Virus record (IMG/VR): IMGVR_UViG_3300045999_010033
Coordinates: 1-64,000 of that record
Length of the DNA: 64,000 nt
Strand: one strand, 5' to 3'
Part shown: positions 31,693 through 58,023 of the stretch, one piece after another
How the letters are laid out: every line of letters starts with the position of its first letter
How positions within the stretch are numbered: position 1 is the first letter of the stretch
Notes under the pieces: generated by a model
Told to the model about the DNA's origin: nothing
The model's input: the letters and a program-made list of their open reading frames with translations, nothing else
The model's database searches: none
Translations under genes and position numbers: made by a program

Positions 31693-32520
31693 TTATTTTT
31701 CGTAAACACTAAATGTACTATTCATAGGAATGATGAACGGATTGTTAGCCGTATCAATTTTGTTGCGAACCTTTTTGAATTTCAGTCCAACAATAACACC
31801 CGGCTCATCAATGTATCTCATATCGTATTCATCGCCATCAATTACTTTGTAACCCATAAATGTGGAAGGGAGTCGTTTACCTTCAAACACCATAGCTACA
31901 CGCCCTTTCCTTTCACTCAACAATCTTTCACAATCAATCATATTGTATCCGCTGAACGAATATGTGAGGTCATAGTTCGAATATTGATTTAACAAACGAA
32001 AACGTTTAGCCACCTTTGTATAATCATAAAAGGTAACGTTAGAAAACCACTCCAATATATTCTTACCATCCAATTTGAAAGATTGAGGGTCAATATCAGA
32101 TGTACCATTTATCCTTACCGAAAAACGATACCCAAGTGTATTGGCTTCCAAATGTGCTTTGGTGATTTCGGTAACCAACCATTTCATAAAAAACTCACGA
32201 TGTTCAAAGAACAATTTTGTTTTAGCGATACGAGATTTATTGATACGATTTTCTTTCACATCAATACGATTGTGACCAGATTCGGCCAAACACGCATCAC
32301 GACATTCTTTCGTACTCATTGGACACACATTGTATCCACTCACAGACGCGGGAGCAAGATACAGAATATAGGTACGTTCATTGTACTTTAATCCTTTAGC
32401 GATTTTAGATGAAGATGCTACTGAACCAAGATAGGAAAGGGCAGTCAGTTTTTTAGCTTGAGAAATGTTTGTAAATACCATATTCATAATGTGTGATTTT
32501 TTAGACATAGTGGGTCTCAT
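31693..32520 (-). CDS. phage GP88-like protein
   Basis: LYLAP..G.NVCP..CL..SG, VRINGTSDI, FYDYTK, DGDEYDMRY. Confidence 0.8.
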   Translation of the reverse strand: MRPTMSKKSHIMNMVFTNISQAKKLTALSYLGSVASSSKIAKGLKYNERTYILYLAPASVSGYNVCPMSTKECRDACLAESGHNRIDVKENRINKSRIAKTKLFFEHREFFMKWLVTEITKAHLEANTLGYRFSVRINGTSDIDPQSFKLDGKNILEWFSNVTFYDYTKVAKRFRLLNQYSNYDLTYSFSGYNMIDCERLLSERKGRVAMVFEGKRLPSTFMGYKVIDGDEYDMRYIDEPGVIVGLKFKKVRNKIDTANNPFIIPMNSTFSVYEK

Positions 32521-32549
32521 TGTGTGTTACCACACAAAGTTAGGGCATT
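32495..32549. repeat. 55-bp promoter/leader duplication, copy 1
   Basis: 53/55 identical to 48935-48989. Confidence 0.95.
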
Positions 32550-32645
32550 TTGGGGACATTTCAATGGGCGTTTTGTTAAAAGTTTTCGAAATTTTTGGGG
32601 ATTTTGTTAGAAATTATCAAATAGCCATTGATAATCAACGTGTTA
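32520..32645 (-). promoter_or_regulatory. P2: promoter + hairpin + IHF-consensus site
   Basis: TAACTTTG 32535-42, ATTG 19 nt upstream; TTGTGTG-GTAA-CACACAA; AATCAACGTGTTA at 32633. Confidence 0.85.
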
Positions 32646-32756
32646 TAACTGGTTGATTTTGGGGAAAATAGGATTTTTATTGAGAATCAATTGATTACAT
32701 ATGTAAAAATACTATAATAAAAAACGGATGAGCATTTACGCCCATCCGTCACATAG

Positions 32757-32990
32757 TTAGTTTTCGATCTGTTCATCTTTTGAGAATAATTCCTCATGGT
32801 ATTTTTTAAATGAATCTCTTTTATTCAAAGGATGATCATCGTGCCATTCACCAATTTCTCTATGTTCCATCTTTACAACATGGGGTGATATACAATAATT
32901 CGGATAACGTTGATTTTCTATCACTACGGGAATATCATCGCCCACTTCATCGAAATCCACAATCATAAGTTCAACCTTGTAAACTCTCAT
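32757..32990 (-). CDS. hypothetical protein
   Basis: Packed ORF; EWHDDHPLN motif. Confidence 0.6.
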   Translation of the reverse strand: MRVYKVELMIVDFDEVGDDIPVVIENQRYPNYCISPHVVKMEHREIGEWHDDHPLNKRDSFKKYHEELFSKDEQIEN

Positions 32991-33005
32991 AATTTATATT
33001 TTTAA

Positions 33006-33503
33006 TTAAACGTTTTGTTCTAGCTCATCAATGTAATTATCCCAACGTTTCAATTCAGCCACTTTTTTTATTCTACAATTTTTCAAATAATTGTTTATGT
33101 ATCCGATAATGTTACCAGCTCCAATCGGATTGGCGGAATGAACATAAATATCTGGGATGGGAATACCAGTATCCATACTATATTTAACCAACCACTTTGC
33201 GCAATCGTATCCGGTCTTTTCAATTATGTTATCGTAATCAATTTTGTAATTATCTTTCACGTTTCTATAATATTCCAAAATAGCGGATTCACCCAAATCG
33301 TGGTCAAAAGAAATCCTTTCAATATTTTCCAAACCATACTGATGTACTGCCATACAAAATTCATCATAACTACGAACAACAATCCAATTTTGATCCATTG
33401 GTGTTCTCATATCATCAAGATATAACCAAAATGTTTTTTTCATATAACTGTTTTTATTTTTACATATGAAACTCCAACTCCGCAGTATCAAAGTTGTAGT
33501 CAA
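33006..33503 (-). CDS. cyclic-phosphate-processing receiver-like domain protein
   Basis: LYLDDMR.P, ISFDHDLG, TGYDCAKW, VHSANPIG. Confidence 0.8.
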   Translation of the reverse strand: MTTTLILRSWSFICKNKNSYMKKTFWLYLDDMRTPMDQNWIVVRSYDEFCMAVHQYGLENIERISFDHDLGESAILEYYRNVKDNYKIDYDNIIEKTGYDCAKWLVKYSMDTGIPIPDIYVHSANPIGAGNIIGYINNYLKNCRIKKVAELKRWDNYIDELEQNV

Positions 33504-34245
33504 AATTTATCGGAGGATTAACACATTCGTATCTGATATTAAGATTACTTGAATTGAACGTTTGGCAATCGTACCAATCTTTCAGTCCGATTACTTTGTG
33601 CCCCATGCCCTCATGAATATGTCCACAAAAATGTAAATGGGGTTTCACTTCACGCACTCTATGATAAAGATCGGCGCATCCAACATTTTCATTCGTGTTC
33701 AATGTTCGGTCGTTGTATCCATACATCGGAGTATGTGTTATGAGTATGTGAGTATCCATAGGAATCAAATTCCAATGTTCATTCATATCATATCCTCTAT
33801 CCGAATTAAATCCCCATCCACTTCCGAAGCTTGGTGAGTATGGAGAGCCCCATATGTTTATTCCTTCAATACAAACTGAACTATTTTCTAAATAGTGTAC
33901 ACCATTTTTCAGATTACCGAGTAATGTTTTTAACCAATGCGGCTTATCATGTTGAGCAAGTTTAACCCATTCAGTATTGTATCCATTGAATATGTGTCTA
34001 TCAATCCATTCCGACTTAACACGAAACTTTCTTTCACTATCGAACACAATGTCGTGATTACCGGCTATGAATACTTTGTATTTGTATGGTTGGTCGGATA
34101 ACCAACCGATGAAATCTTCTACTTCATCTTTTCTACCGATACTAGTGAAGTCGCCGGAATGAATAAGTATATCGCCACCGGGCAACGTCAACTCACGATG
34201 ATATGTGTGAGTATCGGATATTGCTGTTATGCGAAACTTTTTCAT
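33460..34245 (-). CDS. calcineurin-like metallophosphoesterase
   Basis: SDTH, HSGD, AGNHD, ITHTP, GHIHE. Confidence 0.9.
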   Translation of the reverse strand: MKKFRITAISDTHTYHRELTLPGGDILIHSGDFTSIGRKDEVEDFIGWLSDQPYKYKVFIAGNHDIVFDSERKFRVKSEWIDRHIFNGYNTEWVKLAQHDKPHWLKTLLGNLKNGVHYLENSSVCIEGINIWGSPYSPSFGSGWGFNSDRGYDMNEHWNLIPMDTHILITHTPMYGYNDRTLNTNENVGCADLYHRVREVKPHLHFCGHIHEGMGHKVIGLKDWYDCQTFNSSNLNIRYECVNPPINFDYNFDTAELEFHM

Positions 34246-34371
34246 AATTTATAATTTCATTAAATGATTTCACTCATAAATATACATTTAATTTATAGTG
34301 TTACCAAACTTGTCTAAATAAAAAAAGCAGGGAAGCCGAAGCCTCCCTGCGTATATGAATCACCAAACCTA

Positions 34372-35667
34372 TTACCAAGTAATAACCGTATCATCGGCCT
34401 GCTCTTCGGTAAAGAGAGCCTCTTCTTTTTGTTCAGCCTCTTCCGTCTTGATGTACTTCTGAATGAGCTGTTTCATAAACACACGCTCACTATCGAGTCC
34501 ACCATCGTTACTGAAGTATGGAAGGATTGCGATTTCAGCCGCCTCCATAAGAGAGAAGCCATCGTAAATCAAACCAGCTGCCTCCACATTCACACGCGAA
34601 GAAACGATAGTCGATACTTTACTCATATCGGTCTTAATCATTTCACGAGTGGTGCTAGCGATTTCAGCGAGAGCGTTCAGAGAATACTCATCGGCTTCAG
34701 GGAATTTGAACTTCAAAAGAGCAAGTTCGTTTTCCTTATCCAACAGGTCCATCTCAATCGTAACGAAACGGTCCATAATGGCACGGTCCATAATACGAGT
34801 CGAGGTGTATTCGTTACCGATGTTAGCGGTAGCGATGAAGGTAACACCATTAGCAACTTTGATAACCGGTGAACCTTCTGCCTCATCAAGACGAAGATAA
34901 CGCTGACCGGAATCAAGAACCGTCATAAGGATGTTCCACGCTTCGGGGTGAGCACGGCTAATCTCGTCAAGCAGGATGATTGCGTTCGGAGTGCTGATAG
35001 CCTTCACAAAGGCGGATTCGCTGAAGAACGTTCCATTCTCTTTGTTGAAGTGCGTATTACCTACAAGTGTTGCGCGTGGGTCCTGCGTAGCACCAAGGTT
35101 GAAATAAAAATCGGGACGTTTCAGAGAACGAACCAATGATTGAGCTGCAAGTGTCTTACCACAACCGGTAGGTCCGACCATCATAATGTTCTTACCACGA
35201 ACGGCAGAACGAATAAGATACTTCCATTTCAATTCGGTAATGAAAAGACCGGCGGGTTTAAGTTCCTTACCGGCTTCATGGATGAACTGCTTCAACTGCT
35301 CATGCGTTTCAAACGCCTCACTCACGGAGTTAACTTCGTTTTCCTGAATAGAAACTGCGGCACGTTTGAACTCATCCATATCAACAAGTTTGTAAGCAAT
35401 CTTGCCACTCGCTGTAACGTACCCACGAAGTGCCTTGCCTTCATCATGTGCTTGCTTCATTTTGGCTTTGGAAATACCGGGCACTTTAGCGGCAGGTTTA
35501 CCATTGGTATTCATCAACGCAAACGATTCTCCGAACTCAACGACCTGATAGAAATCATTCGTGTACTCAATCGATTTTTTAGCAGTTACACGCTTAGTGG
35601 TTGAACGCTTAACACTCTTTGCTGCAGTTTTACGAGATGCAGTGCTACGATTTTTTCTGATTGCCAT
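34372..35667 (-). CDS. MoxR/CbbQ-NirQ-type AAA+ ATPase
   Basis: GPTGCGKT, LLDEISR, IATANIG, DRAIMDRF. Confidence 0.9.
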   Translation of the reverse strand: MAIRKNRSTASRKTAAKSVKRSTTKRVTAKKSIEYTNDFYQVVEFGESFALMNTNGKPAAKVPGISKAKMKQAHDEGKALRGYVTASGKIAYKLVDMDEFKRAAVSIQENEVNSVSEAFETHEQLKQFIHEAGKELKPAGLFITELKWKYLIRSAVRGKNIMMVGPTGCGKTLAAQSLVRSLKRPDFYFNLGATQDPRATLVGNTHFNKENGTFFSESAFVKAISTPNAIILLDEISRAHPEAWNILMTVLDSGQRYLRLDEAEGSPVIKVANGVTFIATANIGNEYTSTRIMDRAIMDRFVTIEMDLLDKENELALLKFKFPEADEYSLNALAEIASTTREMIKTDMSKVSTIVSSRVNVEAAGLIYDGFSLMEAAEIAILPYFSNDGGLDSERVFMKQLIQKYIKTEEAEQKEEALFTEEQADDTVITW

Positions 35668-35709
35668 AAAATAACTGTTTATTGGTTGGTGATTATAATT
35701 TTATTTATA

Positions 35710-37863
35710 TTATTTTTTAAGAAACATTTCATTCATTGTCTTTGCTACTTCAAACATATTTTCAACGTTCACAAATTTAGCACCATCGCTGTAGGAACGT
35801 TTGAATATATCCCAATCTTCACTTGATTCAAATCGAGATGAGCGAATATCAGTGATGAAGTAGGATAGTACTTGAATACCCATTTCCCCCATACGCTTTA
35901 CTTGCTCGCGAGTGTGTACTGCCGCAGTATTACCTCCATAGTTCAGTTGGTTTTCACCATTGGAAATACTAAAGCAAGGTTGTCCATCGGAGAAATTCAG
36001 AAAATAACTATCCATATCATTCGATTGTGGAATAAGATACTTTTGAATCGCCTCAAAACAAAGTCCTTCCGGCGTAGTTCCATGTGGACGAAGAATTGAC
36101 ATGTACTTACAAAGCTTTTTCAAGCTATCGTAACGGCTATTGTATACCATACATACCCACGGCAATTCGGGGCTACCCGATGTAGTACGAATGGATATTT
36201 GTACATCAATGTTTCTAGCCATAATACATGCTTTGGCAATGGCGACAACTGCGGTGACGGTACGACGCATTTTTTCTCCCTGCATTGAGCCGGAGTAGTC
36301 AATTGATATGTGTAAGTTCACTTTTTTGTATTGGTCAATATGATGATTGAAAAATACACTCTCATTATCATACCCCAATGATGCAATCATACGTTTATCA
36401 ATCCTACCACTTTTAAGGCGACTGAATATAGTCTCACGGCTTTCGGCACGAACTTGTAGTTTCTTACCGAGTAATGTACCGAGTTGAATACCACGTTGAA
36501 CTTCTGCTTCATACTTTTTGTGAATCGCACCATCATACCCACGTGTTGAACATGGGAAATCTGAAGATTCAATCATATTATCGGTAAGACGTTTCACTAC
36601 GATACAATCTACACCTTTACCAACAATACGACCATCTTCGGTCAACTTCATACCAACTTTGGTCAGTTCGGTATCCGATTCTTCGATGTTCTCAAGACTT
36701 TTCAGTTCGGTCTTGCTTACATATTTTTTCTTAATTTTCCCATTCAGAAATTCTTTTTGTTTTTGAATCTTCTTTTTGAGTTGTTCAAGTGCTTTGGGGC
36801 TCAGACGAACTTGCTTACCTTTGGTATCACCATCGGATTCAACTACATCATATCCATCCAAATCATCAATAGTTTCACCATCACCACCTTCACCATCACC
36901 TTCACCATCTTCATCTTCTCCTTTTACTTTTTGACCATCTGCTGGTTTTGTATATTTCAACATTTCTGCAGTAACATCAATGGCCAAGCTCAAAGAATCG
37001 GCGGATGATTTGAGTCTACTGATGTTTTTAAGGTCAAGCAGTTGTGCAATCGTGCGAAGACCTTTCAGTTTACTCAAACTCGTTTTCTCATTGAGAAGGT
37101 TTACGATGCGGAACAAATACGAATCAATCGTTTCGTCGGTGAACTCATCGGAATCGATGCCTTTCGTAACAATTTTATCGTTGAAATAATGTTCATACAT
37201 AGATACATAGTAATCACGATACCCCGGCGCAGTTTTGTAAATCCAACTATCAATACGTCGGTCTTCAATCCAATTACTAAGATTCATAATGAATTGATAC
37301 AATTCCTCCGTCAGTTTAGCACGGGTACGAATCTTACCATTCGGATGGAACATCGCGTATTTTTGTTTGGAATACGCTCCACCGTCAAATCTAGGATTTG
37401 ATTGAAACTTGGTCACATTATCTGCCTCACCTTTGTGATCGAGTACCGAATACGCCATTTTGCTATCCGAAAATTCTCTCAACATTTTGAAATCAGAAAG
37501 AACGATATGTGAACCTTCGTGCAGTGCCAAACCCACCGATACATCGAAGTTATCATCAACATCGGCAGAAAGAATAACCTGCTGGCCATCGGTTTTGCTA
37601 TCCGATTTGGTAGCGAACGTTACTGGGATTTTCTTTCCGGTTACAATCTGAACAAAGTTTGCGATTGCTCTACGAACCGAAGCGAGTTTGTAAAGGTTAG
37701 CAGATTTTTTCATAATCTGAACTTCATCCTTTTTGTACCCCCAATCGGTGTACCGGTCATAATAGTCAAATGACCTTTCATAATCATCATACCAATAAGA
37801 TGAAGCATAAGATTTACTCCACTTATCGGTTGCCTTTTGTTTCAGGCGCGTGTAATATCCCAT
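35710..37863 (-). CDS. vWA (CobT/NorD-like) protein with N-terminal HEXXH domain
   Basis: LHEGSH, IEDRRID, acidic linker, MIDAS DYSGSM, GTTPEG, FSDGQP. Confidence 0.87.
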   Translation of the reverse strand: MGYYTRLKQKATDKWSKSYASSYWYDDYERSFDYYDRYTDWGYKKDEVQIMKKSANLYKLASVRRAIANFVQIVTGKKIPVTFATKSDSKTDGQQVILSADVDDNFDVSVGLALHEGSHIVLSDFKMLREFSDSKMAYSVLDHKGEADNVTKFQSNPRFDGGAYSKQKYAMFHPNGKIRTRAKLTEELYQFIMNLSNWIEDRRIDSWIYKTAPGYRDYYVSMYEHYFNDKIVTKGIDSDEFTDETIDSYLFRIVNLLNEKTSLSKLKGLRTIAQLLDLKNISRLKSSADSLSLAIDVTAEMLKYTKPADGQKVKGEDEDGEGDGEGGDGETIDDLDGYDVVESDGDTKGKQVRLSPKALEQLKKKIQKQKEFLNGKIKKKYVSKTELKSLENIEESDTELTKVGMKLTEDGRIVGKGVDCIVVKRLTDNMIESSDFPCSTRGYDGAIHKKYEAEVQRGIQLGTLLGKKLQVRAESRETIFSRLKSGRIDKRMIASLGYDNESVFFNHHIDQYKKVNLHISIDYSGSMQGEKMRRTVTAVVAIAKACIMARNIDVQISIRTTSGSPELPWVCMVYNSRYDSLKKLCKYMSILRPHGTTPEGLCFEAIQKYLIPQSNDMDSYFLNFSDGQPCFSISNGENQLNYGGNTAAVHTREQVKRMGEMGIQVLSYFITDIRSSRFESSEDWDIFKRSYSDGAKFVNVENMFEVAKTMNEMFLKK

Positions 37864-37883
37864 AATTTAATAGATTTTTTTGG

Positions 37884-37975
37884 TTTGTGTGTCGATACAC
37901 AAATTTACGACAATTTTTTCAAATAACAATGGCTTTTTAAAAATATTTTTTAAGGCACTGAGAATCAATGAGTTA
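37884..37975 (-). promoter_or_regulatory. P3: promoter + hairpin + IHF-consensus site
   Basis: TAAATTTG 37900-07; TTTGTGT-ATCGAC-ACACAAA; AATCAATGAGTTA at 37963. Confidence 0.8.
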
Positions 37976-38025
37976 TGTATATAACCCTGATGTAATGTAT
38001 AACTCGTTGATTTCCAATAAGCGGG

Positions 38026-38729: not shown

Positions 38730-38730
38730 A

Positions 38731-40160: not shown

Positions 40161-40161
40161 A

Positions 40162-42154: not shown

Positions 42155-42190
42155 ATGTGTCTGTATTATTATAGGCAGAATTATCCCAAA

Positions 42191-42265
42191 CTTTGTTACA
42201 CAAAGATACGTAAAGTTGCCGATATAACCAAATAATTTTGTAACCCATTGAAAATCAATGAGTTA
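42191..42265 (-). promoter_or_regulatory. P4: promoter + hairpin + IHF-consensus site
   Basis: TATCTTTG 42201-08, TTTG 20 nt upstream; CTTTGT-GTA-ACAAAG; AATCAATGAGTTA at 42253. Confidence 0.85.
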
Positions 42266-42313
42266 CACTAAAAAGTAAAGTTATACCTTGACTTTTTGGG
42301 TATAAAAGTAAAG

Positions 42314-42769: not shown

Positions 42770-42828
42770 ACAACACGTTTTTACATTGTTACAAAGTTTT
42801 AAATTTTACATAATACAAATACTAATAG

Positions 42829-42910
42829 TACCCCGAATCGGACTCGAACCGATACGCCTTTCGGCACCGCATCCTAAGTGCGGCGTGACTGCCAATTCCA
42901 CCACCAGGGC
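42829..42910 (-). tRNA. tRNA-Leu(TAG)
   Basis: CCGCA-CTTAGGA-TGCGG, long variable arm, A73. Confidence 0.92.
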
Positions 42911-42917
42911 AATTAAG

Positions 42918-43002
42918 CGGAGAGTGATGGTAACGATCCATCTTGAGTTTTACCCCAGCCTCGGTTTAGCAAACCGGCCCCTTACCTTTCGGGCAACTCT
43001 CC
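42918..43002 (-). tRNA. tRNA-Ser(GCT), atypical T-loop ATCGTTA
   Basis: CCGGT-TTGCTAA-ACCGA; GGAGAGT/ACTCTCC-G. Confidence 0.85.
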
Positions 43003-43006
43003 ATTG

Positions 43007-43087
43007 TACCTCGAATCGGACTCGAACCGATACGTCTTTCGACACTTGATTTTGAGTCAAGCATGTCTACCATTCCATCACCAAGGC
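43007..43087 (-). tRNA. tRNA-Leu(CAA)
   Basis: CTTGA-CTCAAAA-TCAAG. Confidence 0.92.
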
Positions 43088-43197
43088 GAATCCTGCTCTT
43101 TTATCTACAACTTAATGTAGTCGAACATCCAACACTATAACATACGTTTTATAGTTGCTACCATTGGAGGCAGGCAGAATTGAATCTATGTTCACTG

Positions 43198-43357
43198 CTG
43201 ACAGGGTTGGATTCGAACCAACAAACCGAGATTCAGTAACGAGCACATAGTGCTGCAGCATTGTGGTCAACCCATACTCATTACCTATTTCTATATCGGC
43301 GACTGCGAGACGAGCAGCTGTGTTTGCCAAGATATTACATCGTTTCACCACCTGTCA
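43198..43357 (-). ncRNA. 160-nt expanded tRNA-like RNA
   Basis: TGACAGG/CCTGTCA-G; enlarged D loop; GCTGC-TCGTCTC-GCAGT arm; ~75-nt branched arm; GTTGG-TTCGAAT-CCAAC. Confidence 0.8.
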
Positions 43358-43364
43358 ATCTATG

Positions 43365-43447
43365 CGGAGAGGAAGGGAATCGAACCCCCAAGGCTTTTAC
43401 ACCCGACTGTTTTCAAGACAGCGTCCTCGTCCATTCGGACCCTCTCC
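43365..43447 (-). tRNA. tRNA-Ser(TGA)
   Basis: GCTGT-CTTGAAA-ACAGT. Confidence 0.92.
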
Positions 43448-43455
43448 ATTATAAG

Positions 43456-43528
43456 AGCGGAAGGCCGGGTACGATCCGGCAACCTCAGCCTTGGCAAGGC
43501 TGCGCTCTACCAATTGAGCTACTTCCGC
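43456..43528 (-). tRNA. tRNA-Gly(GCC), T-loop ATCGTAC
   Basis: CAGCC-TTGCCAA-GGCTG, U73. Confidence 0.9.
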
Positions 43529-43741
43529 AGTTTCCCCACCTTGAGATTACAGATGAGTAGTTATTTCGGTTTTCTATTTCTTAAAACCCGCGAGGCATCC
43601 CTCATTAAAACAGCCAACACTACTGGGAGAGATTGTGTCAGTCTCTTTATCCCACGATGTCTCACTCTAGCCGCAGACATTCTGCTAACCTATTGTTAAA
43701 TGAGTCTTAGGTCAAAGACTACTGAGTATCTCTTACTCATT
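43529..43741 (-). ncRNA. candidate ~210-nt structured RNA
   Basis: Serial hairpins (TGAGTA/TACTCA, AGTCTT/AAGACT, ATGTCT/AGACAT, TGGGA/TCCCA, GGTTTT/AAAACC) between two tRNAs. Confidence 0.55.
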
Positions 43742-43742
43742 G

Positions 43743-43814
43743 AGCGAGAAGTCGGAATCGAACCGACATATCCAGCTTGGAAGGCTGGAGTAATAACCGT
43801 TATACTATTCTCGC
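43743..43814 (-). tRNA. tRNA-Gly(TCC)
   Basis: CCAGC-CTTCCAA-GCTGG. Confidence 0.9.
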
Positions 43815-43820
43815 AGTTAG

Positions 43821-43894
43821 TGGAGATGGAGGGATTCGAACCCCCGACTTTTAGAATGCAAATCTAACGCTCTAGCCAACTGAGCTACATCCCC
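43821..43894 (-). tRNA. tRNA-Ala(TGC)
   Basis: TTAGA-TTTGCAT-TCTAA; G3-U70. Confidence 0.92.
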
Positions 43895-43933
43895 ATTGAT
43901 TATCGTTCTATGGACGTTTTTAATTTTTAATTA

Positions 43934-44404
43934 TTATAATACTTTTTCTGATTTTAGTTTTGTTTCAAATTTGTCAAATCGGGAATCAATATAAGAACGA
44001 TTTTCATCAATTCTTTTATGAATTTCCGGCTCAACCTGATCATGAACATTTTTCTGAAATTCATCAATACGTTTATGGATTTCACCCGAAACTGAATCAA
44101 TATCGCGATGTACATCAGGTAGTATGTGTTCATACACATCCCTTTTAAATTCATTGAGTTCTCTATTTGTATTTTCAAACATTGAATGCGTGTTTGAATA
44201 CACATCATCGAATCTCTTAACGTGCTTACTTACCATTATATTTGCCCTCACGATGCCGATAACCATACCAATTAGTATGACTGTAGCTATCCCAAGAACA
44301 TAGGCAATATACATTTGTTCCATAGTTTGTTTTCTCCTATATGTCAAAGAACGATAATCGTGCCCCAGGCGGGGGTCGAACCCGCACTCGCTTTCAGCGA
44401 ACAA
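43934..44404 (-). CDS. membrane-anchored coiled-coil protein (true start likely MEQMYIAY, ~44322)
   Basis: TM plus HKRIDE repeats; annotated start lies inside the tRNA-Leu. Confidence 0.65.
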   Translation of the reverse strand: MFAESECGFDPRLGHDYRSLTYRRKQTMEQMYIAYVLGIATVILIGMVIGIVRANIMVSKHVKRFDDVYSNTHSMFENTNRELNEFKRDVYEHILPDVHRDIDSVSGEIHKRIDEFQKNVHDQVEPEIHKRIDENRSYIDSRFDKFETKLKSEKVL

Positions 44405-44471
44405 GATTAACGCCGCGACGTGTTGAAGCTTGCGTTAAGTCTTGCATGTCTACCTATTCCATCACCAGGGC
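44361..44471 (-). tRNA. tRNA-Leu(TAA) with 26-nt anticodon-loop insertion (44409-44434)
   Basis: CAAGA-CT-TAA-[CGCAAGCTTCAACACGTCGCGGCGTT]-AA-TCTTG; Leu-type body. Confidence 0.85.
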
Positions 44472-44526
44472 CCATACCTACCTTAATAGGTATGTTTGTC
44501 TATAATGTAAATATAGTAAAAGTTTT

Positions 44527-45594
44527 TTAATTATCCAAATCTTTCCGAAAAGGTTTTGCGTATTTAGGGCGAATACATTTCCATATAATAGAATCGTAAT
44601 CCCTCCCATCTAACATAGAAAATAATATTGATGCATGATTATAACGGATTGCTTTGATTGCAAACTCTTTTCTGCTCAAATTTTCACTACGAATGATTGA
44701 GAATATTTCCAAATAATCACGTTTAATATTTTCAAATCTAACTACCAAGTCTTTTACGGTATCCTTTACCCACGTATCAAATTCGTCCGGCACTCTTTCC
44801 AATAACTCATTCAAATCACCACCGGTCCGCAACAATTCCCAGATATCTACATTCGAAACATTGGTGATTATCTTATGAAGTCTTACATACTCTTCACCTT
44901 TGATTTTCATTCTCTTCCCACCTTTGAAACGTATTACATAACCTTCGGCATCATTTGAAATCATATCCTTCAACTTAGTGAAGTCAGTAACACCATTGTA
45001 CTTTCTAACAACTCTTACATCGGTAAAAAGTGCTACTGATTTAGTCAAAGTTTCAAATTCAATTTCGTCCAAAGTATCTCTATCATATGCACCCAACAAT
45101 ACCAAACCCTCAAATGGGTAGCGGCAGACTATCCGATTCTCATCATATATGATTTCAAAAAGGTAAGTCCAATTTTTTCTCAATCCAGTTGTAGGATAGT
45201 TTTTCAATATAGATAATCCCTTCAACATTTCAGTTGCCTTAACGGCTTGCTCTGAAACGAATGAACCTCTCGTTGCTACTATCCAATCTCCGTTATAGTA
45301 AAATGCAATTCCTAAAGAACCGTCCATCTTTTCAAAGACTTCAAATGATTCGTTTGGAATTTCACTATTGGATAATTCTTCCATATTGAAAAATTTTGGA
45401 AATGGTTTGGCTACCACAGTGCCTTCATTATCCAAAACCAATCCACGGCAATCCAATGTAACTGCATCCCACAATCGGTCGTATTGGCACGTTCTGCTGT
45501 AATTGTAGATTGATAAAGGTAACGTTGGATGGTCTTGCTTAACTATCAATCCTCGTCCGATATAATCGTTCAATATGTTTAATGGATATTTCAT
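44527..45594 (-). CDS. T4 Rnl1 (RnlA)-family RNA ligase
   Basis: YNY, CRGLVL, PFPKFFN, FEKMDGSLGI, FEII, EGYVI, KIKGEEY. Confidence 0.9.
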   Translation of the reverse strand: MKYPLNILNDYIGRGLIVKQDHPTLPLSIYNYSRTCQYDRLWDAVTLDCRGLVLDNEGTVVAKPFPKFFNMEELSNSEIPNESFEVFEKMDGSLGIAFYYNGDWIVATRGSFVSEQAVKATEMLKGLSILKNYPTTGLRKNWTYLFEIIYDENRIVCRYPFEGLVLLGAYDRDTLDEIEFETLTKSVALFTDVRVVRKYNGVTDFTKLKDMISNDAEGYVIRFKGGKRMKIKGEEYVRLHKIITNVSNVDIWELLRTGGDLNELLERVPDEFDTWVKDTVKDLVVRFENIKRDYLEIFSIIRSENLSRKEFAIKAIRYNHASILFSMLDGRDYDSIIWKCIRPKYAKPFRKDLDN

Positions 45595-45995
45595 AATTTT
45601 ACACTAAAACGTTTCCGCATTTTTTCCAAAGTCTCATCCGGTACACCATGTACGGATTTATTACCATGTCTATTTTCTACAATCAATGATACAACGGTGT
45701 ATCCATAGCTCTTTGCTAACTTCAAATATGGTTCAAGTTCCCTTTCGGTAGTTGCCGTATTGGATACTACAATCTCTTGTCCATACTGAGTCGTTTCACT
45801 CATTTGCATCAATTCCTCAACACGCTTTTGACAATCCAAATGGGCTTCATGCAATTTCGAAGCGTCAAAATTGTAGTTACCGTTTGAATCGTAAAAGTAT
45901 TGGTCTGCCTCAAACACATTATTTGAAAACATATATTTAGCAAATGAGCTTTTACCACTACCGGGTAAACCACGTAATATGATTAATGTTTTCAT
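45591..45995 (-). CDS. P-loop polynucleotide kinase-like protein
   Basis: LRGLPGSGKS, EAD, VSNT, HGVP. Confidence 0.85.
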   Translation of the reverse strand: MKTLIILRGLPGSGKSSFAKYMFSNNVFEADQYFYDSNGNYNFDASKLHEAHLDCQKRVEELMQMSETTQYGQEIVVSNTATTERELEPYLKLAKSYGYTVVSLIVENRHGNKSVHGVPDETLEKMRKRFSVKL

Positions 45996-46009
45996 ATGCT
46001 CTTTTTATA

Positions 46010-46348
46010 TTATTGTATAGATAAAAGATAAGTTTTTAATTTTTTCAAAACAACTTCGATGTTAAATGCTATTCGATATGGTCGTTTTAAACGGTGTTCA
46101 TCTATATTAATGTAAGTCACACGATGCCATCCCATAGCAAATAGCTGATATGTTCCATCGGAAAGGGGAGTTTTATATAAGATAACTTCCACAATCGGTC
46201 CGAAGGAGTTATTCTGTGCGTATGGTATATTTCTAAACCTAAATGCATAGCTAGGTCTACCTGCTACAAGCACTTCACCTACACTTTCTATTACGTGCCC
46301 ATCGCACTCCATTCCAACTGCCCTATCAATATTTTTTATGATTAACAT
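46010..46348 (-). CDS. dispersed LTIxNxxK-like protein
   Basis: MLIIKNIDRA..YAFRF; close paralog of the next gene. Confidence 0.7.
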   Translation of the reverse strand: MLIIKNIDRAVGMECDGHVIESVGEVLVAGRPSYAFRFRNIPYAQNNSFGPIVEVILYKTPLSDGTYQLFAMGWHRVTYINIDEHRLKRPYRIAFNIEVVLKKLKTYLLSIQ

Positions 46349-46357
46349 TTGTGAAAT

Positions 46358-46687
46358 TTATTTGTGTGATTCAATCCAATGTTGTAACTTCTTCAATACA
46401 GTTTTAATTCTACCAGCCAAACAATGGGCATGACGTATGTCGGATTCATCAACGTAAATAAACGTTACTTTCTGCCATCCCATAGCAAATAGTTGATACT
46501 TTCCATCAGAATTAGGAACTCTCTCCAATACAACTTCAACGATTGGACCACGAAGGCTACTCTGAACCCAAGGTATATCAAATTTAAATGTGTATCTAGT
46601 TTTGGATGCGTTTTGTCCAGCATCCATTACATCAATCCCATTACAAAACATTCCGATAATCCTATCAATATTTTTTATAACTAGCAT
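46358..46687 (-). CDS. dispersed LTIxNxxK-like protein
   Basis: MLVIKNIDRI..YTFKF; shared GPIVEV..YQLFAMGW. Confidence 0.7.
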   Translation of the reverse strand: MLVIKNIDRIIGMFCNGIDVMDAGQNASKTRYTFKFDIPWVQSSLRGPIVEVVLERVPNSDGKYQLFAMGWQKVTFIYVDESDIRHAHCLAGRIKTVLKKLQHWIESHK

Positions 46688-46703
46688 TTTTGCAATTTAT
46701 TTA

Positions 46704-46886
46704 TCAGATGTACTTACTAATATCTTCTTTCTCAATCTCCACTATCGAGTCATCAAGGATTTCTTTGTTATCGTGTCCGACTACAATGGCGGTATAGAAC
46801 TTGCCATCCAGTTCATAGACTTGATAAGCTGAGTCTTTTACCCATTCCCCTTCTCCAATTAAGGTTGCTTTATCTAGGTTTATCAT
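46704..46886 (-). CDS. hypothetical protein
   Basis: Packed ORF. Confidence 0.5.
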   Translation of the reverse strand: MINLDKATLIGEGEWVKDSAYQVYELDGKFYTAIVVGHDNKEILDDSIVEIEKEDISKYI

Positions 46887-47278
46887 TGTTTTTGTTTTAC
46901 TATTTCAATGAGTTTACGGAGACAAGCAAGTTCTGCTTCTTCTTGTCCATCAAAACTCCCAACCCAAATAGATTCATCTTTATTTTCATCTTGAATCCAT
47001 ATTTCGTACACCTTAGAAAAGGTATCAGGCATTTCAATTACTACTGATTTTCTATACCTAACAAAACTAATAAATAGCCCATAGTTCTTACGAAAGAATC
47101 TGAATGACTGTGAAAATGTTGGACTGAGAGTTATACCATCGCCTTGTCTATCAAAAGACTTTGAATAAAACTTTTTGTTTAGGAAATGTGCAAAACACGG
47201 TTCATCAAACCCAAGTTGCTTCAACTCAAACGCATCTTTGAATGGGATAAAATCTTTCATTGTTTTTGTTTTAGTCAA
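46883..47278 (-). CDS. phage hypothetical (ELKQLGFD..EEAELACL family)
   Basis: Paralog of 40162..40530. Confidence 0.7.
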   Translation of the reverse strand: MTKTKTMKDFIPFKDAFELKQLGFDEPCFAHFLNKKFYSKSFDRQGDGITLSPTFSQSFRFFRKNYGLFISFVRYRKSVVIEMPDTFSKVYEIWIQDENKDESIWVGSFDGQEEAELACLRKLIEIVKQKQ

Positions 47279-47449
47279 TTAAATTTAAAATCGCTACATA
47301 AAGAGCGTAAACGATAACACATAAAACTAAAATCACAATAATCATCATCGTTTCATACGGATATGTTTTTTCACTAATAAGCAATAACCCAAACACTAAT
47401 AATACCAAAAATGTGTAAAATGCTGCTTTAAGTTTCTTTTTCATAACTT

Positions 47450-48112
47450 TTATTTATATTTTTCTACTGATTCATGATGGTCGAAACTCATTAGGCTTTT
47501 GATTGGTTGCCTTCTCATACGGGTAGCAATTTCACTTACCGAAATCGGCCTCAAACCATTACCGTCCACACCAACATCCATCATTTTACCTGGTCCAATT
47601 CTACTAGCCATAGGTAAATGAACGTGTCCATGCAAATGAATTGCACCATTGGCCATTTGGTCCCAACTGGCAATAGGAAAGTGCATCAGTACAAACAATT
47701 CACTACTAACAAGCGGAGTACCCACATTCCGTTTTACAGTTAAATGTAAGTATTTGTTTACGGAACTGAAATGTGATTGACATCCTTCTTTGTTTCTCTC
47801 AATATGATGGTCGTGGTTTCCGGTGATGATGTGAATGTTCTTACATACGATACGATTACGGAAGGCTTCGATTTGCTCAAACCCACCAAAACTCCAATCG
47901 CCCAAATGAAAAAGAATATCATCTTGTCCGACTTCGGCGTTGATGTTATTCACCAATGTATCGTTCATTTCATCCAATGATTTGAAATCTCTACACGTCA
48001 CCGGGTCTTTCCATTGTGTTGTAGTGGAACAGATGTTGGCGTGATTGTAGTGTGTATCAGATGTGAACCACAATTGTTGACCTTTATTTAAACTTATTTT
48101 CATTTGTTTCAT
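47450..48112 (-). CDS. calcineurin-like phosphoesterase
   Basis: TSDTHYNH, HLGD, GNHD, MHFP, HGHVH. Confidence 0.9.
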   Translation of the reverse strand: MKQMKISLNKGQQLWFTSDTHYNHANICSTTTQWKDPVTCRDFKSLDEMNDTLVNNINAEVGQDDILFHLGDWSFGGFEQIEAFRNRIVCKNIHIITGNHDHHIERNKEGCQSHFSSVNKYLHLTVKRNVGTPLVSSELFVLMHFPIASWDQMANGAIHLHGHVHLPMASRIGPGKMMDVGVDGNGLRPISVSEIATRMRRQPIKSLMSFDHHESVEKYK

Positions 48113-48296
48113 CTTTTAATACAATGATTTCTTTTACTTTCACCGGCCAAATAGGCATCCTATCAATCGTTACCTGCATATGCCCATGTAACGGATTCAC
48201 TCCGCACGATTGGCAGATACCAGTGATTCTTTGACCGGGCCACTTTGGATGGAGTACACTAATACGTTTACCAACCAAATTCAAATCGTTTCTCAT
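48084..48296 (-). CDS. hypothetical protein
   Basis: Packed ORF. Confidence 0.5.
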   Translation of the reverse strand: MRNDLNLVGKRISVLHPKWPGQRITGICQSCGVNPLHGHMQVTIDRMPIWPVKVKEIIVLKDETNENKFK

Positions 48297-48306
48297 AATA
48301 ATGTGT

Positions 48307-48960
48307 TTATCGCTCTTTAAGTTCTAATGAATCTAAGCTGAAGGGGCAGTACAGCAAAGTTGGATTCTTTTTCTGAATATCAACATTAGGATACTTCTTT
48401 TTGAACTCTATAACATCAAATCTATTAGTAATAAGATGAAATCCATTTTTAGTTGGAATTTCCGCAATACATTTATATCCTTCCGGTCTTAATACGTTGA
48501 TAAATGCCCGGATATCTTCTCTAACAATTTCATCCTTTGTATCAATATCGATAATCCAACGCTTCTCATAAGTTTTCAGTTGCCCAACAACCGAATCAAA
48601 TAAGTTGTTTTGAACGAACTGACCATCTTTGAGTCTTTGTGCCAAAGCCATCATCATATCCAATGAAACATCTTTATGATTTTGTTTCTGAATATGGATG
48701 TAGGCACGTGCTTTAAACATCTCACAAAGTTGGATTATTTCATCATAACGTTTTTCCAAATATTGAATACTGGAAACGCAATATGTTTTTATTGTACGAA
48801 CCGATTGGTGATTATCCCTTTCACCTTCGGGCTGGTCCTTCTTTCTTTTGAAGATATACAACATATAAAAGTCACCCTCGTTATCGAAGTTCAGCAAAGG
48901 TTTGATTAATTCGATATTGTTTATCATACTATACGATTTTTTAGACATAGTGGGTCTCAT
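48307..48960 (-). CDS. possible AEP/primase-like fold protein
   Basis: WIIDID and TKNGFH resemble AEP motifs I/II (inference). Confidence 0.5.
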   Translation of the reverse strand: MRPTMSKKSYSMINNIELIKPLLNFDNEGDFYMLYIFKRKKDQPEGERDNHQSVRTIKTYCVSSIQYLEKRYDEIIQLCEMFKARAYIHIQKQNHKDVSLDMMMALAQRLKDGQFVQNNLFDSVVGQLKTYEKRWIIDIDTKDEIVREDIRAFINVLRPEGYKCIAEIPTKNGFHLITNRFDVIEFKKKYPNVDIQKKNPTLLYCPFSLDSLELKER

Positions 48961-48989
48961 TGTGTATTACTACACAAAGTTAGGGCATT
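48935..48989. repeat. 55-bp promoter/leader duplication, copy 2
   Basis: 53/55 identical to 32495-32549. Confidence 0.95.
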
Positions 48990-51701: not shown

Positions 51702-51702
51702 G

Positions 51703-57257: not shown

Positions 57258-57277
57258 ATTTTCAAATCTCATTTTCG

Positions 57278-57994: not shown

Positions 57995-58023
57995 ATATTT
58001 ATAAGAACTATATATCTCCCATT

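What the first reader, a model, noticed from the sequence alone, without database searches (positions are those of the whole stretch)
32495..48989. Two unrelated genes share a 55-bp promoter-leader-start cassette whose only two differences are one compensatory base pair
Seen: 32495-32549 and 48935-48989 are 53/55 identical. The two differences (32526/32531 G-C versus 48966/48971 A-T) form one pair of the GTAA-capped hairpin. The cassette gives both proteins (GP88-like and AEP-like) the same N-terminus, MRPTMSKKS. Upstream similarity extends ~150 bp and also matches 14500-14560. Inference: direct evidence of selection on the hairpin and of promoter-cassette transplantation onto new ORFs.
Basis: seen in the sequence. 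Interest (0 to 1): 0.62.

Follow-up and report, generated by a model that had tools for sequence, protein, structure and literature searches.

The report
Mobile early-promoter cassette with start-site hairpin
A giant T4-like phage of a Bacteroidota host carries three copies of a roughly 210-bp promoter-plus-leader module in front of unrelated genes; a small hairpin on the predicted transcription start is kept by selection, while the "shared N-terminus" is most likely untranslated leader.

Summary
32495-32549 and 48935-48989 are 53/55 identical, and the two differences convert the loop-closing G-C pair of a 7-bp hairpin into A-T. Similarity runs about 200 bp upstream, and a third copy lies at 14403-14620.

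All genes are on the minus strand. Read there, each copy is a Bacteroidota-type promoter: TTG, 19-20 nt, TAACTTTG. Upstream lie phased A-tracts and 2-3 dyad boxes. Downstream lies a 41-43-nt leader.

The hairpin's 5' arm is the TTTG of the -7 box through -1. The predicted start site is therefore in the loop, and RNA made from this promoter would lack the hairpin.

Seven promoters of this phage carry such start-centred hairpins with different stem sequences. So do several promoters upstream of orthologous GP88-family genes in related phages.

MRPTMSKKS is probably not protein. Orthologues and the genome's own start-codon context point to the third ATG (32487, 48927, 14403).

The cassette is absent upstream of all 42 distinct orthologues of the second gene. 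The 32-kb copy is a recombinant mosaic, and a relative has its own cassette pair.

The closest known system is the PeSL cassette of T4-like phages. This is a new variant. The hairpin's function is inferred, and reads could not be obtained.

The parts
32487..32720 (-). Cassette copy 1 (promoter plus leader) upstream of the GP88-family gene, running to its likely true start codon at 32487
32723..32750 (-). Intrinsic terminator of the upstream gene (12-bp stem plus T-run), immediately 5' of cassette copy 1
32628..32690 (-). Two dyad boxes (TTGATTATCAA at 32628-32638, TTGATTCTCAA at 32680-32690), degenerate copies of the palindrome GTAACTCGTTGA-NNN-TCAACGAGTTAC
32565..32612 (-). Conserved block with A-tracts about 10 bp apart (TTCTAACAAAATCCCCAAAAATTTCGAAAACTTTTAACAAAA); 44/48 identical to the 14-kb copy
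   Evidence: no match in other viral contigs
32535..32564 (-). Core promoter: -33 TTG (32564-32562), 19-nt spacer, -7 box TAACTTTG (32542-32535); predicted start site at 32530
   Evidence: box position -12 to -5 from PMC9723704
32520..32537 (-). Hairpin TTGTGTG-GTAA-CACACAA; 5' arm at -7 to -1, loop at +1 to +4, 3' arm at +5 to +11
31693..32487 (-). GP88-family gene read from the conserved start (MNMVFTNISQ...)
   Evidence: Pfam PF17338 E=1e-35; orthologue starts; start-context score +4.9 bits
48927..49140 (-). Cassette copy 2 upstream of the phrog_14949 gene. Dyad boxes at 49067-49077 and 49119-49129; -33 TTTG at 49006-49003; -7 box at 48982-48975; hairpin at 48977-48960; predicted start site at 48970
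48307..48927 (-). phrog_14949 gene of unknown function read from the conserved start (MINNIELIKP...)
14403..14620 (-). Cassette copy 3. Dyad boxes at 14542-14552 and 14604-14614; -33 TTG at 14478-14476; -7 box at 14456-14449; different hairpin TTTGGGGA-GTA-TCCCCAAA at 14452-14434; predicted start site at 14444; likely start codon at 14403
37884..37975 (-). Same promoter class: dyad box, TAAATTTG (37907-37900), hairpin TTTGTGT-ATCGAC-ACACAAA
   Evidence: (D13)
42187..42265 (-). Same promoter class: dyad box ATTGATTTTCAAT, TATCTTTG (42208-42201), hairpin CTTTGT-GTA-ACAAAG
   Evidence: (D19)
57266..57352 (-). Same promoter class, upstream of tRNA-Gln: dyad box, TAACTTTG (57295-57288), hairpin TTTGA-GTTA-TCAAA, ATGAGA at +12
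58014..58112 (-). Same promoter class, upstream of the tmRNA gene: dyad box, TAACTTTG (58044-58037), hairpin TTTGGT-TATCG-ACCAAA, ATGGGAG at +11

Best explanation
The repeat is a roughly 210-bp early-promoter-plus-leader cassette of a T4-like jumbo myovirus that infects a Bacteroidota host. It is the counterpart of the PeSL (promoter-early stem-loop) cassettes of T4-like coliphages and vibriophages. On the coding strand each copy reads: 2-3 dyad boxes; a block of phased A-tracts; a host sigma-A promoter (TTG, 19-20 nt, TAACTTTG); a 7-8-bp hairpin whose 5' arm is the TTTG of the -7 box through -1 and whose loop holds the predicted start site; and a 41-43-nt leader whose A-run sits at -15 to -10 (-13 to -8 in the 14-kb copy) of the real start codon, the third ATG. 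Homologous exchange between copies has placed the cassette in front of unrelated genes in a hyperplastic early region. MRPTMSKKS is leader sequence read as protein by a longest-ORF rule. The hairpin is kept by selection as a structure, not as a sequence, and defines a class of seven promoters that also share the upstream dyad box. Shown here: the anatomy, the repetition, the mosaicism, the structural conservation and the start-codon assignment. Inferred: that these are active promoters with the start site in the loop, and what the hairpin does. My preferred mechanism (about 40%) is a sense-strand DNA hairpin or cruciform centred on the start site that modulates initiation or promoter escape by competing with sigma for the TTTG.
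For: Host and phage type. All genes lie on one strand. There is no Shine-Dalgarno signal (7% of genes versus 10.5% background), and an A-rich peak sits at -14 to -10. The phage carries SusC-like receptor genes and a T4-type sheath. TTTG-N19-TAnnTTTG sites lie upstream of genes and tRNAs. Start site. The sigma-A box sits at -12 to -5 in F. psychrophilum (PMC9723704). Hairpin. 8 of 12 promoter-like sites have a perfect stem of at least 5 bp anchored on the TTTG, against 28 of 405 control TAnnTTTG sites (p=5e-7). An unanchored search puts the stems at -9/-7 to +12 in all 7 dyad-box promoters. Ordinary promoters in related contigs show no enrichment (6/36 versus 11% of shuffles). Promoters upstream of orthologous GP88-family genes carry different stems, such as CTTTAC-GAA-GTAAAG, TTGGG-TATAT-CCCAA and GACCT-GTA-AGGTC. 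Loops are G-N(1-2)-A in 5 of 7 (p=4e-5). z-scores are better with DNA parameters than with RNA parameters. Start codon. All 42 distinct orthologues of gene 2 start MI(D/N/E)N at the ATG3 equivalent. GP88 orthologues lack ATG1 and ATG2 or have them out of frame. The start-context PWM gives ATG3 +3.8 to +4.9 bits and ATG1/ATG2 -4.3 to -0.9 bits. The ATGAG motif of ATG1 also sits at +11/+12 in the tRNA-Gln and tmRNA promoters. Mobility. No orthologue of gene 2 has the cassette. The 32-kb copy is a mosaic (15:7 versus 1:17 informative sites, p=6e-5). Relative G001 has two cassettes, 80% identical, whose homology ends at the start codon. Neighbouring genes are not conserved in relatives. The PeSL definition is in PMC4122927.
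Against: There are no transcript data. The start sites, the promoter activity and the early timing are predictions from consensus. The three cassette copies are paralogues, so the hairpin statistics rest on about 5-6 independent promoters in this genome. Four of the seven hairpins are thermodynamically weak (-2 to -5 kcal/mol), and one is no better than shuffles. The G..A loop bias may simply reflect a preference at the start site, because the loop and +1 coincide. Some orthologous promoters (L004, L013, L017) have weak stems or none. In this phage ATG2 is in frame in all three copies and would have a typical 22-nt leader, so an 11-residue extension cannot be excluded. Unlike classical PeSLs, the stem-loop is not an upstream terminator. 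No close sister genome was available to show a cassette-bounded indel directly.
Confidence: 0.7

Rival explanations
1. Reading as in T4 genes e, soc, 49 and I-TevI. The hairpin works only in RNA. Transcripts that read through from upstream contain both arms and fold, which hinders ribosome access or processing. Transcripts that start at the embedded promoter lack the 5' arm and are fully active.
For: The architecture matches T4, where the promoter lies in the 5' strand of the inhibitory helix (PMC3014915). All genes are co-directional, so read-through is expected. Only copy 1 has an upstream terminator. GUAA is a GNRA tetraloop. In relative G001 the two copies differ by a T-A to T-G change that only a sense-strand hairpin tolerates.
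Against: The 3' arm ends 32-34 nt before the conserved start codon in the cassettes, and 20-36 nt before it at 37907 and 42208. The same hairpins sit at the tRNA-Gln and tmRNA promoters, where nothing is translated. Both the embedded promoter and the read-through would be host-sigma (early) transcription, so the temporal logic of T4 gene e is missing. Several stems are not stable as RNA (z = -0.5, +0.1, -0.9).
Confidence: 0.25
2. The hairpin is part of the 5' leader RNA of both genes, and the cassette supplies a common translated N-terminus, MRPTMSKKS.
For: The longest ORFs do start at ATG1. ATG2 is in frame in all three copies and would have a 22-nt leader, the modal length in Bacteroidota (PMC7366714). 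A GAG(G) lies 4-7 nt upstream of ATG2.
Against: The 5' arm lies at -7 to -1 of the promoter. ATG1 is followed by a stop in copy 3 and in L012. ATG1 and ATG2 are missing in L004, and ATG2 is out of frame in L011. Of 51 orthologue contexts, 48 have no in-frame upstream ATG. The start-context score of ATG1 and ATG2 falls in the 2nd-10th percentile. The genome does not use Shine-Dalgarno sequences.
Confidence: 0.1
3. The inverted repeat is a double-stranded operator for a dimeric repressor that sits on the start site. It is not a hairpin. The 'compensatory' change is a symmetric change in the spacer of TGTGT-N6-ACACA.
For: Three promoters (32542, 48982, 37907) share TGTGT-N6-ACACA, which resembles CRP-type sites (own knowledge). 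The variable pair falls in the N6 spacer. The cassette clearly holds other protein-type dyads.
Against: The other four class promoters, and those in relatives, have unrelated arms (TTTGGGGA, CTTTGT, TTTGA, TTTGGT, CTTTAC, GACCT). Arm spacing ranges from 3 to 6 nt and the dyad axis shifts. Loops are strand-asymmetric (G..A on the sense strand), which a double-stranded site does not predict.
Confidence: 0.1
4. Assembly artefact: one cassette copy, or the junction at the 55-bp near-identical core, is a chimera or a collapsed repeat of a metagenomic assembly.
For: The record is a metagenome-assembled virus. No reads could be examined.
Against: The three copies differ by 20-40% outside the core and have unique flanks. 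A 55-bp repeat is shorter than normal reads. An independently assembled relative shows the same architecture, with two copies ending at start codons. Related GP88 loci carry the same kind of promoter and leader upstream.
Confidence: 0.03

Closest known systems
PeSL (promoter-early stem-loop) cassettes of T4-like phages (RB49/phi1, T4/PST, KVP40/nt-1; PMC2839356, PMC4122927)
   Same: Both are short repeated regulatory cassettes in the hyperplastic, ORFan-rich early regions of T4-like myoviruses. Both hold an AT-rich upstream part, a host-sigma early promoter and a leader that ends at the start codon of the downstream gene. Copies sit in front of unrelated genes and show signs of recombination between copies.
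   Different: The promoter is of the Bacteroidota type (-33 TTG, -7 TAnnTTTG), with an A-tract in place of a Shine-Dalgarno sequence. The conserved stem-loop is not a terminator just upstream of the promoter; it overlaps the -7 box and is centred on the start site. The cassettes carry upstream dyad boxes. There are only three copies of this sequence family. Mini-circles and indels between sister genomes were not tested.
Promoter-embedded inhibitory helices of T4 genes e, soc, 49 and I-TevI (PMC3014915)
   Same: A promoter lies in the 5' strand of a helix, so transcripts from it lack the helix while longer transcripts form it.
   Different: In T4 the 3' strand sequesters the Shine-Dalgarno sequence or the AUG, and the internal promoter is late. 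Here the conserved start codon lies 20-36 nt beyond the helix, the promoter is of the host-sigma type, and the same helix occurs at tRNA and tmRNA promoters.
Hairpin promoters of coliphage N4 virion RNA polymerase, and DNA mini-hairpins (PMC4496689, PMC13037366)
   Same: Both are small 5-8-bp stems with 3-4-nt G..A loops at early promoters. In N4 such hairpins extrude from supercoiled DNA at physiological superhelical density, and an N4 hairpin placed inside a sigma-70 promoter silences it in a gyrase-dependent way.
   Different: No virion-type RNA polymerase was seen here among the large ORFs that were tested. The N4 hairpin is centred at -11 and is read on the template strand. Here the hairpin is centred at about +2 of an ordinary host-type promoter, the G..A loop is on the non-template strand, and the closing pairs are mostly not C-G.
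Bacteroidota sigma-A promoters and Shine-Dalgarno-independent translation starts (PMC9723704, PMC7366714)
   Same: The -7 box, the -33 TTG and the 19-20-nt spacer match, as does an A-rich leader without a Shine-Dalgarno sequence.
   Different: Start-centred hairpins are not a described feature of these promoters, and ordinary promoters in related phage contigs do not show them.

Membership tests
PeSL cassettes of T4-like phages | Host is a T4-like myovirus with hyperplastic regions rich in small early genes | tested here: met
   The sheath protein matches T4-like phages, including RB49. PolB, an Mre11/Rad50-like fusion and RNR are present. The window is packed with small co-directional ORFs. 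Neighbours of both genes are not conserved in relatives.
PeSL cassettes of T4-like phages | Repeated composite element holding an AT-rich region and a host-sigma early promoter | tested here: met
   There are three copies, 61-79% identical over 131-208 nt, with a 96% identical core. They contain TTG-N19/20-TAACTTTG. Promoter activity itself was not tested.
PeSL cassettes of T4-like phages | 3' end of the element is the translation signal and the start codon of the downstream gene | tested here: met
   Homology between copies fades at ATG3. In relative G001 it ends right after the start codon. The cassette's A-run lies at -15 to -10 of ATG3 (-13 to -8 in the 14-kb copy), where the genome-wide A peak is.
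PeSL cassettes of T4-like phages | Stem-loop just upstream of the promoter that acts as a terminator | tested here: not met
   Only copy 1 has an upstream terminator, and it lies outside the repeated part. The conserved stem-loop overlaps the -7 box and has no T-run.
PeSL cassettes of T4-like phages | Recombination between cassettes: gene swaps, deletions and mini-circles | tested here: inconclusive
   Copy 1 is a mosaic (p=6e-5), and the cassette is absent from all gene-2 orthologue contexts. No sister genome was available and there were no reads, so indels and circles were not seen.
T4 gene e-type promoter-embedded inhibitory helix | Promoter lies in the 5' strand, with the start site inside the helix | tested here: met
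   This is by prediction only: the box sits at -12 to -5 and the stems run from -9/-7 to +12.
T4 gene e-type promoter-embedded inhibitory helix | 3' strand sequesters the ribosome-binding site or the start codon | tested here: not met
   The conserved start lies 20-36 nt downstream of the helix. The helix is also present at the tRNA-Gln and tmRNA promoters.
N4-type hairpin promoter | Phage encodes a virion RNA polymerase that reads the hairpin | tested here: not met
   No RNA polymerase domain appeared in the 18 ORFs of 431 to 2,301 residues that were scanned. Three ORFs above 550 residues (1,780, 1,431 and 582 residues) and the smaller ORFs were not scanned.
N4-type hairpin promoter | 5-7-bp stem and 3-nt G..A loop centred at -11 | tested here: not met
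   Stem and loop sizes are similar and the loops are G..A, but the centre is at about +2 of a host-type promoter.
Bacteroidota sigma-A promoter | -7 TAnnTTTG with a -33 TTG about 19 nt upstream, in an intergenic position | tested here: met
Bacteroidota sigma-A promoter | Mapped transcription start 5 nt downstream of the box | not testable with these tools
Pfam GP88 (PF17338) | Profile match above the gathering score | tested here: met
   124 bits against a cut-off of 24.4, E=1e-35, residues 44-250.
Archaeo-eukaryotic primase (AEP) superfamily, for gene 48307-48927 | Sequence or fold match to an AEP catalytic domain | tested here: inconclusive
   There is no Pfam hit. The only PHROG hit is phrog_14949, of unknown function. 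There is no PDB profile hit. The model has mean pLDDT 67. Fold searches find only generic ferredoxin-like folds with Z no higher than 7.1. A conserved WI(V/I)DID ... GYH ... RFD pattern is compatible with AEP motifs I-III; that comparison is from my own knowledge and was not tested.

The most novel reading that the evidence does not exclude
A class of host-sigma-A-dependent phage early promoters carries an obligatory small hairpin on the non-template DNA strand, with GNA/GNNA loops. The hairpin is built from the TTTG of the -7 box and the first 5-12 transcribed bases. It forms on supercoiling or during initial scrunching and acts as a switch for initiation or promoter escape. That would be a promoter architecture not described for any cellular RNA polymerase. 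It is coupled to a 27-bp palindrome (GTAACTCGTTGA-NNN-TCAACGAGTTAC) that marks promoter cassettes in many unrelated phages.
Probability: 0.2. Interest if true: 0.8.

Novelty: new variant of a known kind. Interest (0 to 1): 0.5.

Why it matters
If this is right, PeSL-type mobile promoter cassettes are not confined to T4-like phages of Proteobacteria. They would also shape the hyperplastic regions of large Bacteroidota phages, rebuilt from that phylum's own promoter and translation signals.

It also has a practical consequence for annotation. Longest-ORF gene calls in such phages will add false shared N-termini wherever a cassette carries in-frame ATGs.

The start-centred hairpin is conserved as a structure across promoters and across phages. 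It is a compact, easily testable candidate for a new way of tuning Bacteroidota promoters, where few regulatory parts are known.

Tried and rejected
- **Reads:** There is no check of assembly, excision products or 5' ends.
- **Near-identical phage DNA:** megablast of 31000-37900 against the phage collection found nothing.
- **Cassette A-tract block in IMG/VR:** an exact-pattern scan found nothing. BLAST of the cassette against four related records found only the dyad box. The cassette sequence is therefore private to this genome.
- **Relatives of the 14-kb gene:** none found.
- **Sigma-70-type promoter scan:** no enrichment, as expected for this host.
- **Is the hairpin general to Bacteroidota-type promoters?** Rejected. 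36 promoters in related contigs show no enrichment.
- **Dyad-box scan of IMG/VR as a route to more hairpin promoters:** 97 of 102 sites had no TAnnTTTG box within 220 nt. It revealed the widespread 27-bp palindrome instead.
- **Literature search for that palindrome:** only chance primer matches. BLAST against isolate phages gave only weak, short hits.
- **Rfam:** no family at the cassettes.
- **AEP assignment of gene 2:** not supported.
- **A covariance model of the hairpin:** not built, because the stems differ in length and register and cannot be aligned column by column.

Full report
**1. Observation**

The two 55-nt stretches are as described. They differ only at + strand positions 32526/32531 (G, C) versus 48966/48971 (A, T).

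Nearly all genes of this record lie on the minus strand: 278 of 292 ORF calls. Read on that strand, the stretch is GCCCTAACTTTGTGTGGTAACACACAATGAGACCCACTATGTCTAAAAAATC. The two differences are the loop-closing pair of TTGTGTG-GTAA-CACACAA, and they change G-C to A-T.

Similarity continues upstream at 78% over 208 nt. A third copy at 14430-14560 is 79% identical to the 32-kb copy. The genome holds exactly these three copies.

**2. Context**

The window is the first 64 kb of a 221,095-bp IMG/VR virus record with 35% G+C.

- It encodes a contractile-tail sheath whose relatives are T4-like phages. The closest are a Microcystis phage and Flavobacterium phage immuto.
- It also encodes family B DNA polymerase, an Mre11/Rad50-like fusion, RNR, collagen-like fibres and two SusC/TonB-type outer-membrane proteins with CarboxypepD_reg domains.
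- The window holds 24 tRNA genes, a tmRNA gene and a GOLLD RNA.

Gene starts lack Shine-Dalgarno motifs: 7% of genes have one, against 10.5% background. They show the A-rich peak at -14 to -10, with A at -3, that is typical of Bacteroidota. Intergenic regions carry TTTG-N19-TAnnTTTG, the Bacteroidota sigma-A promoter consensus (PMC7366714, PMC9723704). The host is therefore most likely a member of the Bacteroidota. The region is the early, small-gene part of a T4-like genome.

**3. Anatomy of the cassette (minus strand, copy 1)**

| Element | Coordinates | Source |
|---|---|---|
| Intrinsic terminator of the upstream gene | 32750-32723 | |
| Dyad boxes TTGATTCTCAA and TTGATTATCAA | 32690-32680, 32638-32628 | |
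| 48-nt block with A-tracts about 10 bp apart | 32612-32565 | |
| -33 TTG, then a 19-nt spacer | 32564-32562 | |
| -7 box TAACTTTG | 32542-32535 | |
| Hairpin | 32537-32520 | |
| ATG1, ATG2, ATG3 | 32520, 32508, 32487 | |

In Flavobacterium psychrophilum the TAnnTTTG box occupies -12 to -5 (PMC9723704). By that rule +1 is 32530, the G that opens the GTAA loop. The 5' arm is then -7 to -1 and the 3' arm is +5 to +11. The hairpin therefore straddles the predicted start site, and RNA made from this promoter would contain only its loop and 3' arm.

**4. The shared N-terminus is probably not protein**

- All 42 distinct orthologues of the second gene recovered from IMG/VR start MI(D/N/E)N(I/L)(E/D). 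That is the equivalent of ATG3 at 48927. Only 2 of the 42 contexts have any in-frame upstream ATG.
- Orthologues of the GP88-family gene start MN(T/I)MKFTT or MSKLKFTT, again at the ATG3 equivalent. L004 has neither ATG1 nor ATG2. In L012 the ATG1 frame runs into TAA. In L011 the ATG2 frame runs into TAA.
- In copy 3 of this genome, ATG1 is followed by a stop after three codons.
- The ATGAG motif that contains ATG1 recurs at +11/+12 in the promoters upstream of tRNA-Gln and the tmRNA gene, where it cannot be a start codon.
- A position weight matrix built from 274 other gene starts of this genome scores ATG3 at +4.9, +4.4 and +3.8 bits (46th-59th percentile of annotated starts). ATG1 and ATG2 score -4.3 to -0.9 bits, which is like random ATGs. 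The AAAAAA inside 'SKK' is the A-run at -15 to -10 of ATG3 (-13 to -8 in the 14-kb copy).

The likely true starts are therefore 32487, 48927 and 14403, with 41-43-nt leaders. An 11-residue extension from ATG2 cannot be strictly excluded. ATG2 is in frame in all three copies and would have a 22-nt leader.

**5. The hairpin is a conserved structure**

Twelve intergenic sites in the genome combine a -33 TTG with TAnnTTTG. Eight of them have a perfect stem of at least 5 bp whose 5' arm includes the TTTG of the box. Among other TAnnTTTG occurrences the figure is 28 of 405 (Fisher p=5e-7). An unanchored search gives the same stems.

The seven sites with the best stems are exactly those that also carry the upstream dyad box:

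| Site | Stem and loop |
|---|---|
| 14456 | TTTGGGGA-GTA-TCCCCAAA |
| 32542 | TTGTGTG-GTAA-CACACAA |
| 48982 | TTGTGTA-GTAA-TACACAA |
| 37907 | TTTGTGT-ATCGAC-ACACAAA |
| 42208 | CTTTGT-GTA-ACAAAG |
| 57295 | TTTGA-GTTA-TCAAA |
| 58044 | TTTGGT-TATCG-ACCAAA |

Stem sequence, stem length (5-8 bp), loop length (3-6 nt) and register all differ between sites. The position relative to the box does not.

Promoters upstream of the GP88-family gene in related contigs carry other stems at the same place: CTTTAC-GAA-GTAAAG, TTGGG-TATAT-CCCAA, GACCT-GTA-AGGTC, TTTGT-ATC-ACAAA and ATTTG-TATA-CAAAT. Some relatives have weak stems or none.

As a negative control, 36 ordinary promoter-like sites in 106 related loci show no enrichment. 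Six of the 36 have stems of at least 5 bp, against 11% after shuffling. The signal is therefore not a by-product of A-rich leaders.

Two caveats apply. The three cassette copies are paralogues. Four of the seven stems are weak, at -2 to -5 kcal/mol.

**6. Is the hairpin DNA or RNA?**

Three things favour a sense-strand DNA hairpin or cruciform.

- The geometry is fixed to the promoter and not to the start codon, which lies 20-36 nt beyond the stem.
- The hairpin is also present at the tRNA and tmRNA promoters.
- Five of the seven loops are G-N(1-2)-A on the sense strand, where 7% is expected (p=4e-5). GNA and GNNA loops, including GTTA, are the loops of unusually stable DNA mini-hairpins (PMC13037366).

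In addition, N4 promoter hairpins of similar size extrude at physiological supercoiling, and one of them silences a sigma-70 promoter when placed inside it (PMC4496689). z-scores are better with DNA parameters than with RNA parameters.

There is a confound: the loop coincides with +1, so the G..A bias could be a preference at the start site.

The alternative is the T4 gene e, soc, 49 and I-TevI arrangement. There, a promoter lies in the 5' strand of a helix that forms only in longer transcripts (PMC3014915). That model fits the geometry. It does not fit the distance to the start codon, the RNA-gene promoters or the timing.

A double-stranded operator is unlikely because the arms are unrelated between promoters.

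I put the DNA-level model at about 40%, the read-through-RNA model at about 25%, an operator at about 10%, and the rest on no separate function or on something not considered.

**7. Mobility**

None of the 42 distinct upstream contexts of gene-2 orthologues carries this cassette. Many have no promoter at all, and others have unrelated TAnnTTTG promoters.

Copy 1 is a mosaic. In the dyad/A-tract block it agrees with copy 3 at 15 informative sites and with copy 2 at 7. In the core and leader it agrees with copy 3 at 1 site and with copy 2 at 17 (Fisher p=6e-5). That is the signature of exchange or gene conversion between copies.

In the related record G001, whose GP88 protein is 79-80% identical, the GP88 promoter and leader have a second copy 23 kb away. 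It is 80% identical over 183 nt and lies in front of a different gene. The homology stops just after the start codon.

The neighbours of both genes are not conserved in relatives. None of the 26 GP88 loci has the upstream neighbour, and none of the 80 gene-2 loci has either immediate neighbour.

This matches the description of PeSLs: an AT-rich region, an early promoter, a translation signal and a start codon, repeated in hyperplastic regions and acting as points of exchange (PMC4122927).

It differs in four ways. The promoter type is different. The stem-loop sits on the start site instead of upstream as a terminator. Dyad boxes are present. The copy number is small.

**8. The dyad box**

The cassette's TTGATnATCAA boxes, with their flanks (gttataaCTCGTTGATAATCAATGAc), are degenerate copies of a 27-bp palindrome, GTAACTCGTTGA-NNN-TCAACGAGTTAC.

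Many contigs carry 2-7 copies within a few kb. These contigs have very different G+C contents. The copies sit in intergenic positions upstream of sigma-70-like or Bacteroidota-like promoters.

I found no description of this palindrome in the literature. It is probably the site of a conserved phage-encoded DNA-binding protein, but this was not tested.

**9. Gene identities**

- 31693-32487 is a member of Pfam GP88.
- 48307-48927 belongs to phrog_14949, of unknown function. A conserved DxD ... GYH ... FD pattern leaves it open.
- 14011-14403 has no family and no relatives were found.

**10. What could not be done**

The assembly check, the search for excision products and any transcript evidence are therefore missing. 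All statements about promoter activity, start sites and timing are inferences from consensus and comparative data.

**Verdict**

The feature is real. The closest known kind is the PeSL cassette, and this is a Bacteroidota-phage variant of it. It has an unusual start-centred hairpin that is conserved as a structure and whose mechanism remains open.

Noticed in passing
window 55991-56405 (-): A full-length GOLLD RNA (Rfam RF02032, 296.6 bits, model positions 1-416) lies inside the tRNA cluster, next to a tRNA-Gly gene.
   Followed up: no
window 42828-57994 (-): There are 24 tRNA genes and a tmRNA gene with tag peptide GNTYANAEYAVAA. A 94-nt tRNA-like gene at 12283-12376 has an unassignable anticodon.
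   Followed up: no
IMG/VR loci L133, L138, L157, L160-L163, L168, L172, L173, L186, L195; own copies at window 14542, 14604, 32628, 32680, 42248, 49067, 49119, 57335, 58095: A 27-bp palindrome, GTAACTCGTTGA-NNN-TCAACGAGTTAC, occurs in 2-7 copies per few kb in intergenic regions of many phage contigs. These contigs differ widely in G+C content and promoter type, and the copies lie upstream of promoters. No description was found in the literature.
   Followed up: partly
L008:1470-1510 and L011:1455-1500 (leaders of the GP88 orthologues): In two relatives a terminator-like hairpin with a T-run (GGGGTGAATATTGCCCCATTTTTT) lies between the promoter hairpin and the start codon. This may be an attenuator.
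   Followed up: no
window 10985-11212: Eight or more copies of a 15-nt period lie inside ORF 10623-11210 (-). They encode a lysine/alanine/proline-rich repeat (...KKPAATKKAA...), resembling a histone H1- or AlgP-type basic protein.
   Followed up: no
window 5140-5276: Four to five direct 19-nt repeats (GGTGCAAATGAATATAAGG) lie in an intergenic stretch. They look like iterons and may mark an origin or a regulator array.
   Followed up: no
window 7415-8932 and 9160-10196: There are tandem families of paralogous small genes: repeat families D3 and D5 with 4-5 copies, and D4 with 3 copies. This is typical of a hyperplastic region.
   Followed up: no
G000:C1:69124-75749 (L030:5124-11749, -): The phage encodes two TonB-dependent, SusC-like outer-membrane beta-barrel proteins of 750 and 1091 residues. 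One has a CarboxypepD_reg domain. This is unusual auxiliary cargo and a marker of a Bacteroidota host.
   Followed up: partly
window 27105-28598 (-): A nicotinamide/nicotinate phosphoribosyltransferase gene (NAMPT_N plus NAPRTase domains), suggesting phage-encoded NAD salvage.
   Followed up: no
window 20873-20930 (-): A classical PeSL-like arrangement: the intrinsic terminator AATCCCTTT-GAAT-AAAGGGATT plus a T-run lies directly upstream of a TTTG-N19-TATCTTTG promoter.
   Followed up: partly
L048, L062, L097 (upstream of gene-2 orthologues): In several relatives the TATCTTTG box ends only 4-5 nt before the ATG. That predicts leaderless or near-leaderless mRNAs for this gene.
   Followed up: no
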